Origin: Octopus sinensis
Lineage: Eukaryota
Length of the DNA stretch: 8,723 nucleotides
Assembly (NCBI RefSeq): GCF_006345805.1
Contig: NW_021828268.1
Coordinates: 1-8,723 of the forward strand
Direction of reading: 5' to 3'
The notes under the pieces are model-generated. The model saw only the letters and a list, made by a program, of their open reading frames with translations. It made no database searches and had not been told where the DNA came from. The translations under genes were made by a program, and so were the position numbers. Positions 420 to 8,643 of the stretch are shown here, piece after piece (the stretch's first letter is position 1; each line of letters opens with the position of its first letter).

Positions 420-421
420 AA

Positions 422-835
422 GGCGGCGAGCTGGCAGAAACGTTAGCGCGCCGGGCGAAATGCTTAGCGGTATTTCGTCTGCCGTTACGTTCTGAGTTCA
501 AATTCCGCCGAGGTCGACTTTGCCTTTCATTCTTTCGGGGTCGATAAATAAAGTACCAGTTTCGCACTAGGGTCGATGTAATCGACTTAATCCATTTGTC
601 TGTCCTTGTTTGTCCCCTCTATGTTTAGCCCCTTGTGGGTAATAAAGAAATAGTTATTTCGTCTGTCGTTACGTTCTGAGTTCAAATTCTGCCGAGGTCG
701 ACTTTACCTTTTATCCTTTCGGGGTCGATAAATTAAGTACCAGTTTCGCACTGGGGTCGATGTAATCGACTTAATCCGTTTCTCTGTCCTTGTCTGTCCC
801 CTCTATGTTTGGCCCCTTGTGGTAGTAAAGAAATA
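422..835 (+). mobile_element. tRNA-derived SINE family F1, dimeric copy (head + 2 x 184-bp units)
   Basis: A-box-like TGGCAGAAACG at 432 and B-box GAGTTCAAATTCC at 494 and again at 678. Unit period 184 (TATTTC at 471 and 655). Ends AAAGAAATA; flanked by a 21-bp TSD. The central GTCGACTTTGCCTTTCATCCTTTCGGGGTCGATAAA segment resembles, from memory, the MetaSINE-type conserved domain (needs a Dfam/Repbase/SINEBase check). Confidence 0.93.
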
Positions 836-1972: not shown

Positions 1973-2502
1973 ATCCGTTATATAAGAGCAGTATTAGTTG
2001 CAGTATTCGTCGAAAAATAATATACCTTATGACCGTGCTTTATTTTACGAACACAATACATATCAGAGGTAGACGAACATCATACGAACAGTAGTAGCAA
2101 GTGTGTATGCAAGATGCGCATTTCTACATGGTTGAGCGTCGTCAGTAGAATATACTCACAGCCAAATGCAAGCTAAGATAAAATCTGTCACCACCGTTAT
2201 CGGAAAACTGTGAATGAACAGTCCACTGCGTTTTGTAAATAACCGTGCGGTTGAATAAAATTCCTGAGAGCAACCCACTGGCAGCGGCAACAGTAAATTT
2301 GTAAAGAACAGTTAAGGAAAGCACTAAAAGGAATTGGTTGAAGAATGAAAAAAACTTTTTACAAATTTTATTTAACCGTCGCGATTCGTTTCGTTACGGA
2401 CAGTGTAGAGAGCTTGCAGTAGTCGGCTGTTTTCCAGTGTTAAGAAGATAATAGTAACGAGAACGCTCGCCCACTTTTAAAGGCAATGTGTGGGTCGAAT
2501 AG

Positions 2503-3268
2503 GGTGGCGAGCTGGCAGAAACGTTAGCGCGCTGGGCGAAATGCTTAGCGTTATTTCACCTGTCGCAACGTTGTAAGTTCAAATTCCGCCGAGGTCGACT
2601 TTGCCCTTCATCCTTTCGGGGTCGATTAAATAAGTACCAGTTGCGCACAGGGGTCAATGTAATCGACTTAATCTGTTTGTCTGTCCTTGTTTGTCCCCTC
2701 TGTGTTTATCCCCTTGCGGGTAGTAAAGAAGTAGGTATTTCGTCTGCCGCTACGTTCTGAGTTCAAATTCCGCCGAGGTCGACTTTGCCCTTCATCCTTT
2801 CGGGGTCGATTAAATAAGTACCAGTTACGCACTGGAGTTGATGTAATCGACTTAATCCGTTTGTCTGTCCTTGTTTGTCCTCTCTGTATTTAGCCCCTTG
2901 CGGGTAGTAAAGAAATAGGTATTTCGTCTGCCGCTACGTTCTGAGTTCAAATTCCGCCGAGGTCGACTTTGCCCTTCATCCTTTCGGGGTCGATTAAATA
3001 AGTACCAGTTGGCACTGGGGTCGATATAATCGACTTGATCCGTTTGTTTGTCCTTGATTATCCTCTCTGTGTTTAGCCCCTTGTGGGTAGTAAAGAAATA
3101 GGTATTTTGTCTGCCGCTACGTTCTGAGTTCAAATTCCGCCGAGGTTGACTTTACCTTTCATCCTTTCGGGGCTGATAAATTAAGTACGAGATGCATACT
3201 GGGGTCAATCTAATCGGCTGGCACCCTCTCCCAAAATTTCGGGCCTTGTGCCTAATGTAGAAAAGAAT
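2503..3268 (+). mobile_element. F1 SINE tetrameric array: head + three tail-A units + one unit ending in alternative tail B
   Basis: Head GGTGGCGAGCTGGCAGAAACG at 2503. Unit starts (TATTTC/TATTTT) at 2552, 2736, 2920, 3103 (periods 184, 184, 183). The last unit leaves tail A after GGGGTCAATCTAATCGGCT and ends GGCACCCTCTCCCAAAATTTCGGGCCTTGTGCCTAATGTAGAAAAGAAT. No TSD found. Confidence 0.93.
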
Positions 3269-3477
3269 GTGGATGCCAAATGTCTGTGCTAGAAAGAGAT
3301 AGACGTACAATCGTCTAAGAGCAAAAAAATAAACAGTTCGAAGATTCTTGAGAGAGTTCCAATCTGTACATGTTTGAAAGTTGAAAGTAGGTCGGGAGGA
3401 CGAAGTAAGTGAATGGAGTTAGCTGTGTTGAGCTAAGTTTTACCTCAGATGTTGAGGAAATGGACAACACTTATTTA

Positions 3478-4195
3478 CAGTGTGATTGAAAAGTAACTCC
3501 CTATTTTCAAATACTTATAAATTATTTATTAATTGTAACTTTTGTGTTTGTTTGTCCTTAAGCGTATAGATGTAACGCTTCAAGGTTCTCACATCAGAAT
3601 AACCAGTGAATATCGAAGAATTAACACCAACAAGGAAGAAATATTATTTACATATATTATTTATTCGTTTACCCGACAGGTTGTTACAGAGACAGTAGAA
3701 AAAAGGTTGTCTGTCAGTAGAGAGGGAAAGAGTAAGGTAGTCATGGTGCTTTTTCTCTCTTACTTGTTGCAGTATTTGACTGCGGCCATGCTGGAGCACC
3801 GCCTTTAATCGAGCAACTCGACCTCGACCCCCGGGACTTATCTTGTGTAAGCCCAGTACTTATTCATCGGTCTCTTTTCCGAACCGCTAAGTACGGGGGA
3901 CATAACACACCAGCATCGGTTGTCAAAGCAATGCTAGGGGACAAACACAGACACACACATAATATATATCGTATATATACATATTACGACGGGCTTCTTT
4001 CAGTTTCCGTCTAACCAATCCACTCACAAGGCTTTGGTCGGCCGAGGCTATAGTAGAAGACACTTGCCCAAGGTGCCACGCAGTGTACACTGAACCCCGG
4101 GAACCATTGGCTGTAAACAAGCTACTTACCACACAGCGCACTCCTGCGCCTTTAATAACTTTTTTAAAATAGGGAGTTTCCTTTCAATCACCCTG
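3478..4195. mobile_element. Tc1/mariner-type MITE (non-autonomous DNA transposon) interrupted by a SINE
   Basis: Left TIR 3478-3507 CAGTGTGATTGAAAAGTAACTCCCTATTTT vs reverse complement of 4166-4195 CAGGGTGATTGAAAGGAAACTCCCTATTTT: 27/30 identical. TA on both sides (3476-3477, 4196-4197). CAG(G/T)GTG ends with a TA duplication are typical of Tc1/mariner. No transposase ORF. Confidence 0.85.
3750..4150 (-). mobile_element. tRNA-derived SINE family F2, full-length copy with internal microsatellite
   Basis: Minus strand starts GGCGCAGGAGTGCGCTGTGTGGTAAGTAGC (A-box-like), has a B-box-like GGTTCAGTG, then GGCACCTTGGGCAAGTGTCTT (CCTTGGGCAAG follows the tRNA head in CORE/V-type SINEs). Internal TA/TG tract at ~3944-3985; tail GGCGGTGCTCCAGCATGGCCGCAGTCAAA...CAAGTAAGAGAG. 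Recalled as an abundant Octopus SINE. Confidence 0.88.
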
Positions 4196-4685
4196 TATCT
4201 TGAACACAGTATGATAGTTGACTTTTGTAAATTTCTGAGCACAAATGCCGAGAACAAAGGAGAGAAGCTTGCAGAAACATTTAGTATGCGGTTTCAATTC
4301 CTGGATGAAAATCCAGGAACTAACCATCTAAGGTTCAAAACCTTATATATCTATTAGATACGATTTCGATTCCCAGTTGATTCAACATCCTTTTACTTAC
4401 TCCGTCACCATAGAAAGAGGAAGCCGCCATCACTTTGTTCGAACATAGAGTAATGTAATACGGGGGAAAACATTAAAAAAAAACATAGATAAAGTGAAAC
4501 TAGGGAAAACACTGGACAGTCACGGTTGGCATGGCATTTGATCATAGGTCTGTTCAATCAAAGCTGTCGCTAAATACTTTCTTTCTAAATGTTCCTCAGA
4601 GAAATTTCTGGAGACTCTTCTATTATATTTTCATTTTTTCTTTATAATTACATGATCTAGCTGCTGAGTCAGTTAGCTGATATTT

Positions 4686-5082
4686 GAGAGAGAGAGAGAG
4701 AAAGAGAGAGAAAGAGTGAGACAGAGGGAGACAGTGAGAGAGAGAGACAGAGGAAGACAGTGAGAGAGAGAGACAGAGGGAGACAGCGAGAGAGAGAGAC
4801 AGAGAGAGACAGAGGGAGACAATGAGAGAGAGACAGACAGAGGGAGACAGAGAGAGAGAGAGACAGAGGGAGACAGAGAGAGAGAGACAGAAGGAGACAG
4901 TGAGAGAGAGACAGACAGAGAGAGACAGTGAGAGAGACAGACAGAGAGAGACAGAGAGAGAGAGAGAGAGGGAGACAATGAGAGAGACATACAGACAGAC
5001 AGAGGGAAACAGAGAGAGAGAGAGGGAGACAGTGAGAGAGAGAGAGACAGAGGAAGACAGTGAGAGAGAAAGAAAGAGAAAG
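4686..5082. repeat. GA-derived degenerate minisatellite, ~24-bp unit AGACAGT(GA)nCAGAGGG
   Basis: AGACAG(T/C/A) and CAGAGG(G/A) recur around variable (GA)n spacers; almost entirely purine on the + strand. Confidence 0.9.
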
Positions 5083-5149
5083 AGTGTGTGTGTCGAGTAC
5101 ATAATTTTCGGCTCAAATTGGACATCGACGTTCCAGCGTGTGTGTTTGC

Positions 5150-7066: not shown

Positions 7067-7137
7067 GACGGTTTAGCTTAACTGATAAATCAATTGACCG
7101 GTAATCAAAGAGATACGATTTCGAGTCCCCGCCTTTT
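7067..7137 (+). pseudogene. Degenerate tRNA-like sequence (tRNA-Thr-like pseudogene or SINE head)
   Basis: TAGCTTAACTGATAAA sits at tRNA positions 8 onward (A-box-like). Anticodon arm ATTGA-CCGGTAA-TCAAA pairs 4/5 with a 7-nt loop (xGT anticodon), followed by a TTCGAGTCCC T-loop and TTTT. T and acceptor stems do not pair, so it is not a functional tRNA. Confidence 0.4.
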
Positions 7138-7969: not shown

Positions 7970-8451
7970 CAAACAAGGACAGACAAAGGGATTAAGTCAA
8001 TTACATCGACCCCAGTGCGTAACTGCTAAGCATTTCGTCCGGCATGCTAACGTTTCTTATTTCTTTACTGCCCACAAGGGGTTACACACAGAGGGTACAA
8101 ACAAGGACAGACAAACGGATTAAGTCGATTATATCGACCCCAGTGCGTAACTGGTACTTAATTTATCGACCCCGAAAGGATGAAAGGCAAAGTCGACCTC
8201 GGCGGAATTTAAACTCAGAACGTAGCGGCAGACGAAATACCTATTTCTTTATTACCCACAAGGGGCTAAACACAGAGGGGACAAACAAGGACAGACAGAC
8301 ATAGGTATTAAGTCGATTACATCGACCCCAGTGCGTAACTGGTACTTATTTATCGACCCCGAAAGGATGATGAAGGCAAAGTCGACCTCGGCGGAATTCG
8401 AACTCACAACGTAACGCAGACGAAATACCGCTATGCATTCTGCTCGCCGCC
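7970..8451 (-). mobile_element. F1 SINE array, rearranged: deleted head + 2 units + re-entry into head + truncated third unit
   Basis: Minus strand starts GGCGGCGAGCAGAATGC (A-box largely deleted). Unit 1 is followed by the standard GAAATAG|GTATTTC junction (8234-8247) and unit 2 (8058-8241). Then AGAAACGTTAGC...ATGCTTAGC (8025-8057) is fused to AGTTACGCACTGG, and the copy is truncated at 7970. Confidence 0.92.
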
Positions 8452-8571
8452 TTTGAGTAATGATATAATGTCTAAGTTATGTTTGTACTTGTGTTGTTAT
8501 CAATCAAATAAAATTTCCGTAAGAAGAGTCGATGTGAAAACAAATTGATAGAATTTCATTTTTTCGGCTTT

Positions 8572-8643
8572 GCAGAATTTGAACTCAGAACCTAGACATA
8601 CGGAACAAATACTGCAAACATTTCTTCTGACGCCTAAACGTTT
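8572..8643 (-). mobile_element. Old degenerate F1-related SINE head fragment
   Basis: Minus strand AAACGTTTAGGCGTCAGAAGAAATGTTTGCAGTATTTG...GTTCTGAGTTCAAATTCTGC aligns with the F1 head through the B-box. Confidence 0.7.

What the first reader, a model, noticed from the sequence alone, without database searches (positions are those of the whole stretch)
2503..3268. Array 2 looks like three circularly permuted units popped into an older SINE with a different tail
Seen: the head and first ~25 nt of unit 1 (TTATTTCACCTGTCGCAACGTTGTAAG, to 2576) differ at ~7 sites from units 2-3, and unit 1 then switches to the array-private type (GCCCTTC, GATTAAAT). Unit 4 does the reverse: it begins like units 2-3 (CTGCCGCTACGTTCTGAG), then lacks the private variants (TTTACCTTTC, GATAAATT) and ends in tail B. 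Removing 2577-3127 (551 bp = 184+184+183) reconstitutes one ordinary tail-B monomer. The crossover window is the B-box region (2577-2602 / 3128-3153). Inference: homologous integration of a circular or multimeric donor, or homology-primed insertion into an existing copy, i.e. a SINE that targets its own family. The lack of a TSD is consistent with this.
Basis: partly seen in the sequence, partly recalled or inferred. Interest (0 to 1): 0.8.

Follow-up and report, generated by a model that had tools for sequence, protein, structure and literature searches.

The report
SINE-derived tandem array, partly homogenised
Array 2 is a short tandem array built from a SINE-like retroposon, a kind already described in molluscs and reptiles; its patchwork is better explained by neighbouring repeats overwriting part of each other than by a block of repeats jumping into an older copy.

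Summary
Unit 1 starts with a divergent 25-nt patch. Units 1-3 share three private variants. Unit 4 lacks them and ends in a different tail. Removing 2577-3127 (551 bp) leaves a monomer.

- Units 1-3 are not a uniform young block. Their 5' halves are identical (exact repeats of 67-95 bp). Their 3' halves differ by 10-14%, as much as units from different arrays.
- The head and unit 4 up to about 3188 are no more diverged than the inner units, so an older host SINE is not shown.
- The A/B tail switch lies near 3189, not at the B box.
- No second tail-B copy exists in the window, and no outside copies could be retrieved.

My best reading is an old head+(184 bp)n array of the known TSD-(SINE)n-TSD type. 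All three copies of the family in the window are arrays, and array 1 has a 21-bp TSD. Recent short-tract gene conversion homogenised the 5' module of array 2, with tracts ending near the B box at both array edges.

The unit-1 patch and the origin of tail B remain unexplained. Circular-donor or self-targeting integration is not excluded, but it is not needed. Interest is low to moderate.

The parts
2503..2551 (+). Head of array 2. It is the 5' arm of the head hairpin and contains two imperfect ~20-nt direct sub-repeats.
   Evidence: 46/48 identical to array 1's head. TRF reports period 20 over 2507-2550. In array 1 the head pairs with the first ~25 nt of unit 1.
2551..2575 (+). Divergent 'a1' patch at the start of unit 1: 7 substitutions of mixed type. 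It is the 3' arm of the hairpin.
   Evidence: 7/25 against the outside reference; other units 0-2/25. Max-chi-square p=0.021. Fold energy weakens from -41.6 to -31.1 kcal/mol.
2552..2735 (+). Unit 1 (184 bp), tail A
2736..2919 (+). Unit 2 (184 bp), tail A
2920..3102 (+). Unit 3 (183 bp), tail A
3103..3268 (+). Unit 4. It is family-typical up to about 3188 and has a B-type 3' module after that.
2576..2643 (+). Homogenised 5' module, copy in unit 1
   Evidence: Exact repeats 2576-2642 = 2760-2826 and 2576-2643 = 2944-3011
2732..2826 (+). Homogenised segment: unit 1/2 junction plus the 5' module of unit 2
   Evidence: Exact 95-bp repeat with 2916-3010
2916..3010 (+). Homogenised segment: unit 2/3 junction plus the 5' module of unit 3
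3109..3146 (+). Homogenised stretch at the start of unit 4. It ends at T3147.
   Evidence: Exact 38-bp repeat with 2742-2779 and 2926-2963
3189..3268 (+). B-type 3' module ('tail B'). It is a diverged homologue of tail A, lacks about 20 nt of it, and is unique in the window.
   Evidence: Break at column 88, p=0.008. No second copy in the window. Weak collinear similarity to tail A (69/2000 and 37/2000 shuffles).
420..835 (+). Array 1, same family: head plus 2 units, flanked by a 21-bp TSD at 399-419 and 836-856
   Evidence: 0/2000 shuffles
7970..8453 (-). Array 3, same family: head with an internal deletion, 2 units, then a third piece that joins head positions 18-48 directly to unit column 90

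Best explanation
What it is. Array 2 is one locus of a short non-coding retroposon family. In this window every copy of the family exists as head + n x 184-bp units. Each unit holds the 3' arm of the head hairpin, a B-box-like motif, a body and tail A.

Age. The locus is about as old as the other copies. The 3' halves of its units have each drifted 5-8% from the family consensus, in a star-like pattern. Its last unit carries a different, distantly homologous 3' module (B) from about 3189 onward.

How the mosaic arose. One unit's already decayed 5' module, carrying C55, T78 and A81, was copied over the 5' modules of the other tail-A units and over the first ~44 nt of unit 4. Tracts end in or near the B box at the two edges of the array, where the sequences beyond are too different: the a1 patch on the left and unit 4's own variants on the right.

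Shown: the identity and divergence pattern and its statistics; the TSD of array 1; the same unit junction in all three arrays.
Inferred: gene conversion as the process, and its direction and timing.
Not explained: why the a1 patch is so divergent, and how a B-type end came to close the array. A template jump from a B-type RNA to A-type RNAs during reverse transcription is my preferred guess for the latter.
For: 1. Columns 26-91 are identical among units 1-3 (0/64 in all three pairs). The array 1 pair differs at 5/64, the array 3 pair at 5/66, and pairs from different arrays at 3-7/64.
2. Columns 92-190 differ at 10, 13 and 11 of 95 sites within array 2. Between arrays the range is 11-15/95, and the array 1 pair differs at 9/95.
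3. All 17 sites that vary among units 1-3 lie at column 94 or beyond (max-chi-square permutation p=0.017). From the family's own 5'/3' rate ratio I expect about 7 unit-specific changes in the 5' modules, and 0 are seen (Poisson about 8e-4; my calculation from the table, with the partition chosen after seeing the data).
4. The only variants private to units 1-3 (columns 55, 78, 81) lie inside the identical zone. There are none in the 3' half.
5. Exact repeats of 67, 68 and 95 bp occur inside array 2. The longest in array 1 around the same anchor is 23 bp.
6. The head and unit 4 columns 45-88 are no more diverged than the inner units.
7. The same junction AAAGAAATAGG|TATTTCG occurs in all three arrays, and a 21-bp TSD encloses the whole of array 1. 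Arrays are therefore the normal form of the family here.
8. The same architecture is described for bivalve SINEs, sometimes mixing families (PMC11481361): first unit with a full head, inner units truncated at one head position, one TSD pair around the array. SINE-derived satellites approaching concerted evolution are described in squamates (PMC10702118).
Against: - Only 8 units from one 8.7-kb window were available, and the reference 'consensus' is built from them.
- The partition at column ~92 was chosen after looking. The conservative p-values are about 0.02.
- At least two or three separate conversion events with similar right ends (columns 82-100) are needed.
- The a1 patch (6-7 changes in 25 nt) is not explained by conversion.
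- The array has no TSD, so a single clean insertion is not shown.
- Homogenisation by assembly polishing cannot be excluded without the reads.
Confidence: 0.5

Rival explanations
1. An older tail-B monomer (head + a1 + unit-4 body + tail B) received three in-phase tail-A units (2577-3127). The route was homologous integration of a circular or multimeric donor, or homology-primed copying, with the crossover in the B box.
For: An integer number of units sits exactly in register. Both edges deviate from the inner type. The only stretch identical between units 1 and 4 is the 20-bp B-box region. No TSD flanks an inserted block. The a1 patch is otherwise unexplained.
Against: The head differs from the tail-A head at only 2/48 sites, and unit 4 columns 45-88 are ordinary, so the host is not visibly older. 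The inner units are not a uniform block; their 3' halves are as diverged as independent copies. The donor would therefore need the same partial homogenisation. The A/B boundary is at about 3189, far from the crossover. No other tail-B copy is present to show that such monomers exist. The a1 patch weakens the hairpin without compensating head changes.
Confidence: 0.12
2. A chimeric cDNA made in one retrotransposition event. The LINE reverse transcriptase started on a B-type RNA, then switched by homology near the B box, or end-to-end at the canonical junction, onto tail-A multimer RNA. The whole array was inserted as it is now.
For: All three arrays share one junction, located at the 3' side of the head hairpin loop. 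Array 3 has a second kind of junction inside the head, so junction formation recurs. Template jumping by non-LTR reverse transcriptases and chimeric retrocopies are established (for example PMC2104539 and PMC8857657, listed). Mixed-family arrays exist in bivalves.
Against: No TSD flanks array 2. This model does not explain identical 5' halves beside diverged 3' halves unless the source array already had that pattern. It also does not explain the a1 patch.
Confidence: 0.2
3. Plain unequal sister-chromatid exchange. An ancestral heterodimer, [head a1 b1 tailA][a4 b4 tailB], expanded by misaligned crossovers in the B box. This produced a4|b1 hybrid units.
For: The B box is the longest stretch shared by units 1 and 4. 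Columns 152 and 172 show a gradient across units 1, 2 and 3 that fits a hybrid unit 2.
Against: Unequal exchange duplicates whole segments, so it cannot produce three different 3' halves. Later decay would also have hit the 5' halves, which carry no unit-specific change.
Confidence: 0.08
4. Assembly or polishing artefact. The exact identity of the 5' modules was created by consensus polishing within a repeat.
For: Exact 67-95-bp identities sit next to segments that are 10-14% diverged. Reads were not available.
Against: The shared variants are non-consensus for the family, so mis-mapped reads from other copies would not create them. The 3' halves are well resolved.
Confidence: 0.05

Closest known systems
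Tandem-like SINE arrays of the TSD1-(SINE)n-TSD1 type in bivalves (Scapharca broughtonii; PMC11481361)
   Same: The first unit has a complete head. Inner units are all truncated at the same head position. One TSD pair encloses the whole array (seen for array 1). Arrays can include an element of a different family at one end. The host is a mollusc-like genome.
   Different: Here the inner units keep a complete tail A. In the bivalve arrays the inner units are truncated at both ends and only the last one has the full tail. Array 2 itself has no detectable TSD. The truncation point coincides with a hairpin loop. Partial, module-limited homogenisation was not reported for the bivalve arrays.
SINE-derived satellites in squamate reptiles (PMC10702118)
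   Same: Tandem repeats built from part of a SINE. The proposed history is an initial duplication by unequal homologous recombination, then amplification, then incipient concerted evolution.
   Different: The squamate loci are satellite-like and often long. This locus has 3.6 units, and homogenisation covers only half of each unit.
Concerted evolution of tandem repeats by gene conversion and unequal exchange, with less homogenised edge repeats; mosaic Alu elements made by gene conversion (established knowledge, from my own memory)
   Same: Short conversion tracts create mosaics between related SINE copies. The edge units of an array escape homogenisation.
   Different: Conversion here would act between adjacent units of one small array. 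It is not demonstrated directly.
Non-LTR retrozymes: tandem hammerhead-ribozyme repeats thought to move through circular RNA (bioRxiv 10.64898/2026.07.22.740005)
   Same: Tandem non-coding units of a few hundred bp in animal genomes.
   Different: No hammerhead or any other Rfam family is detected in array 2, even at E<=10.
Octopus tRNA-derived SINEs OK, OR1 and OR2 (Ohshima and Okada 1994, cited in PMC4758252 and PMC4824008)
   Same: The sequence looked cephalopod-like to me, with a B-box-like motif and dispersed short repeats. This is recollection, not a test.
   Different: The source organism is unknown. This family shows no significant CORE-domain similarity (45/500 shuffles). A different element in the window, at 3740-4150, does (0/500).

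Membership tests
SINE (LINE-mobilised short retroposon) | Variable-length target-site duplications flanking the element | tested here: met
   Array 1 has a 21-bp TSD with 1 mismatch (0/2000 shuffles). The TSD is not found for array 2 (823/2000) and is doubtful for array 3 (a 9-mer, 48/2000).
SINE (LINE-mobilised short retroposon) | Head derived from tRNA, 7SL or 5S RNA with an internal Pol III promoter (A and B boxes) | tested here: inconclusive
   The B-box-like motif GTTCAAATTCC (GTTCGAATTCC in array 3) is present in every unit. ARAGORN finds no tRNA. Rfam finds no tRNA or other family. The head folds as a long hairpin, not a cloverleaf.
SINE (LINE-mobilised short retroposon) | 3' tail shared with a partner LINE, or a simple-repeat or A-rich end | not testable with these tools
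   The element ends in ...GTAGTAAAGAAATA. No LINE is available for comparison.
TSD1-(SINE)n-TSD1 tandem-like SINE array (PMC11481361) | First unit with a full head; later units truncated at one common head position; a single TSD pair around the whole array | tested here: met
   All three arrays share the junction AAAGAAATAGG|TATTTCG. Array 1 has the enclosing TSD. Array 2 meets the first two features but not the TSD.
Tandem repeat under concerted evolution | Units more alike within an array than between arrays, with array-private shared variants | tested here: met
   Met only for the 5' module of array 2: 0/64 within against 3-7/64 between, with private C55, T78 and A81. Not met for its 3' half: 10-13/95 against 11-15/95.
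Non-LTR retrozyme | A self-cleaving hammerhead ribozyme in each repeat unit | tested here: not met
   The Rfam scan of 2480-3290 at E<=10 returned nothing. The whole-window scan returned only microsatellite noise.
CORE-SINE superfamily | Conserved ~60-bp CORE domain in the body | tested here: inconclusive
The query is recalled, so this is only a lead.
   Tail B occurs once in the window. No outside copies were retrievable.

The most novel reading that the evidence does not exclude
The constant unit junction sits at the 3' side of the head hairpin loop, and column 89/90 is a recurrent module boundary. These could mean that the arrays are made again and again by the reverse transcriptase. One route is jumping from hairpin-stalled or 5'-processed SINE RNAs onto the 3' end of another RNA. 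Another is rolling around a circularised 184-nt RNA, which would be a ribozyme-free analogue of retrozymes.
Probability: 0.1. Interest if true: 0.7.

Novelty: new member of a known kind. Interest (0 to 1): 0.3.

Why it matters
If the best reading holds, this is a small, clean example of a dispersed retroposon turning into a tandem repeat. It would also show concerted evolution starting in only one module of the unit. That is useful for understanding how SINE-derived satellites arise in repeat-rich mollusc-type genomes. It is also a caution for dating SINE copies by divergence, because half of each unit here looks young and half looks old. It does not by itself reveal a new mobility mechanism.

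Tried and rejected
1. Retrieving other genomic copies.
- Exact 22-mer scans of metagenome, viral and prokaryote-genome collections found nothing. The one exception was a chance match inside a Natrialba coding region.
- Searching the protein collection with the 93-aa antisense ORF that runs through the array gave no hit.
- The window holds no real gene to anchor a locus look-up.
- A literature search for a 12-mer of the core returned only unrelated papers.
- The supplement of the O. vulgaris repeat paper is a short document with no library.

2. tRNA or ribozyme identity: ARAGORN and Rfam found nothing.

3. TPRT insertion of a 5'-truncated array into the B box, treating the 20-bp repeat as a TSD. 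Rejected, because the right end of the 'insert' is mid-unit and not the tail-A 3' end.

4. Tail-A trimer inserted by TPRT just upstream of a 5'-truncated B copy. Rejected, because no matching TSD lies upstream of the head.

5. The a1 patch as quasi-palindrome correction or A-to-I editing. Rejected. By my own reading of the sequence, the changes are of mixed type and do not increase complementarity to the head. The fold gets weaker.

6. Tail B related to the flank downstream of array 3: not significant (184/2000).

7. CORE-domain membership of this family: not significant.

Full report
CONTEXT. The window is AT-rich, full of microsatellites, and has no credible gene. It holds three arrays of one short repeat family.
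- Array 1 lies at 420-835 (+): head plus 2 units.
- Array 2 lies at 2503-3268 (+): head plus 3.6 units.
- Array 3 lies at 8453-7970 (-): a head with an internal deletion, 2 units, and an odd third piece.
- A diverged head fragment of the same or a related family lies at 8572-8643 (-).
I suspect a cephalopod genome from memory, but nothing here verifies the source.

OBSERVATION.
- The 184/184/183 spacing of the B-box-like motif makes 2577-3127 exactly 551 bp.
- Unit 1 differs from units 2-3 at six of its first 25 positions, plus the base before them.
- Units 1-3 alone carry C55 (GCCCTTC) and T78/A81 (GATTAAATAAG).
- Unit 4 starts like units 2-3, lacks those variants, and ends in a tail found nowhere else in the window.
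- The unit-1 cluster is modestly significant (p=0.021).
- No TSD flanks array 2.

WHAT THE FAMILY IS.
- Array 1 is enclosed by a 21-bp TSD with one mismatch (0/2000 shuffles). The family therefore moves by a LINE-type retroposition mechanism, and an entire head+2-unit array sits inside one TSD pair.
- All three arrays use the same junction, AAAGAAATAGG|TATTTCG. No plain monomer is present.
- The head is not recognisably tRNA. In array 1 it pairs with the first ~25 nt of unit 1 as a ~30-bp imperfect hairpin (-43.4 kcal/mol, z=-2.3).
- The repeat unit begins at the 3' side of that hairpin's loop.
- Each unit has a B-box-like GTTCAAATTCC.
- This architecture is the TSD1-(SINE)n-TSD1 class described for bivalve SINEs, which sometimes includes elements of another family (PMC11481361). 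SINE-derived satellites with incipient concerted evolution are known in squamates (PMC10702118).

THE KEY NEW RESULT. I split the unit at about column 92.
- 5' part (columns 26-91): units 1-3 of array 2 are identical, 0/64 in every pair. The two units of array 1 differ at 5/64, those of array 3 at 5/66, and units from different arrays at 3-7/64.
- 3' part (columns 92-190): units 1-3 differ at 10, 13 and 11 of 95 sites. That equals the distance between arrays (11-15/95) and exceeds the array 1 pair (9/95).
- All 17 sites that vary among units 1-3 lie at column 94 or later (permutation p=0.017).
- The three array-private variants all lie inside the identical zone. The 3' halves share none.
- As exact repeats: 2576-2642 = 2760-2826, 2576-2643 = 2944-3011, 2732-2826 = 2916-3010 (95 bp) and 2742-2779 = 3109-3146. 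Array 1's longest exact repeat around the same B-box anchor is 23 bp.
The two halves of the unit therefore have different genealogies. The 3' halves are old and star-like, each 5-8% from consensus like every other unit in the window. The 5' halves coalesce very recently, onto one copy that had already picked up three changes.

- The inner 551 bp is not a uniform young block.
- The supposed older host is not visibly older. The head differs from array 1's head at 2/48 sites, both CpG transitions. Unit 4 columns 45-88 carry about four changes, like any other unit.
- Unit 4 becomes truly different only from column 89 (3189). It has about 30% divergence over columns 89-121, then a ~20-nt gap, then only weak collinear similarity to tail A. 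The A/B switch is therefore about 45 nt downstream of the proposed crossover window.
- Column 89/90 is also where the third piece of array 3 joins a head fragment to the body. I read it as a module boundary of the family.
- The a1 patch weakens the head hairpin from about -38 kcal/mol (array 2 head joined to unit 2's start) to -31, with no compensating change in the head. It looks like damage rather than the diagnostic sequence of an active subfamily.
- 'Ordinary tail-B monomer' has no support inside the window.

BEST EXPLANATION (confidence about 0.5). This is an old array whose 5' modules were recently overwritten by short-tract gene conversion, or an equivalent repair between neighbouring units. 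Tract ends fall in or near the B box at the two edges. The pattern is shown; the process is inferred. Two features are not explained. The first is the 6-7 changes packed into 2551-2575. The second is how a B-type 3' module came to close the array. I favour a template jump from a B-type RNA to tail-A RNAs during reverse transcription, because non-LTR enzymes do this and mixed arrays are known.

RIVALS.
It fits the integer, in-phase block and gives the patch a home. It needs a donor with the same half-unit homogenisation, and its 'older host' is not seen.
- One-step chimeric cDNA (about 0.2). It explains the A/B composition and the constant junction, but not the half-unit identity or the missing TSD.
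- Unequal exchange alone from a heterodimer (about 0.08).
- Polishing artefact (about 0.05). It is unlikely, because the shared variants are non-consensus.

WHAT COULD NOT BE DONE. No other genomic copies could be obtained. They are listed as next steps.

VERDICT. The object is a new member of a known kind, a SINE-derived tandem array, with a neat signature of module-limited homogenisation. Interest is low to moderate (0.3). The most novel reading still open is arrays generated through hairpin-guided jumps or circular RNA and then copied by homology into family members. I put it at about 10%.

Noticed in passing
399-419 and 836-856 (flanking 420-835): Array 1 (head + 2 units) is enclosed by a 21-bp target-site duplication, TATATCAA[A/G]ATACTGAACTTT. 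This is direct evidence that a whole array lies inside one insertion footprint.
   Followed up: yes
7970-8055 (-), within array 3: The third piece of array 3 starts at head position 18 (AAACGTTAGC...), jumps from ...GCTTAGC straight to unit column 90 (AGTTACGCAC...), and stops at GTCCTTGTTTG. This is a second type of intra-family junction. Its breakpoint is at the same column where tail A and tail B diverge.
   Followed up: partly
8428-8453 (-), head of array 3: This head lacks about 24 nt, roughly one of the two ~20-nt direct sub-repeats that make up the head (TRF period 20 over 2507-2550).
   Followed up: no
421-510 and 2502-2591: The head and the first 25 nt of unit 1 form a ~30-bp imperfect hairpin. 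The 184-bp repeat unit begins at the 3' side of its loop. The hairpin is intact in array 1 and weakened in array 2.
   Followed up: partly
8572-8643 (-): A diverged (73%) fragment containing a head and a B-box-like motif, from the same or a related family. It is followed by unrelated A-rich sequence.
   Followed up: no
about 3740-4150 (-): A different SINE-like element whose GGCACCTTGGGCAAGTG...AGCCTC stretch matches the CORE domain of MIR (0/500 shuffles).
   Followed up: partly
4357-4374 and 7112-7129 (+): Two copies of GATACGATTTCGA[T/G]TCCC (0 expected by chance), with partial similarity around them. This is probably a third short repeat family with a B-box-like motif.
   Followed up: partly
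4686-5084: A 400-bp purine-rich array (GAGA/GACA) with a 26-bp higher-order period. Long (TA)n, (TG)n and (ATAC)n tracts elsewhere produce only spurious miRNA hits in Rfam.
   Followed up: no
L001 3318-3339 (Natrialba taiwanensis contig): The only exact hit to the 22-mer SINE core in any collection lies in a haloarchaeal coding region. It is a chance match and is not related.
   Followed up: yes
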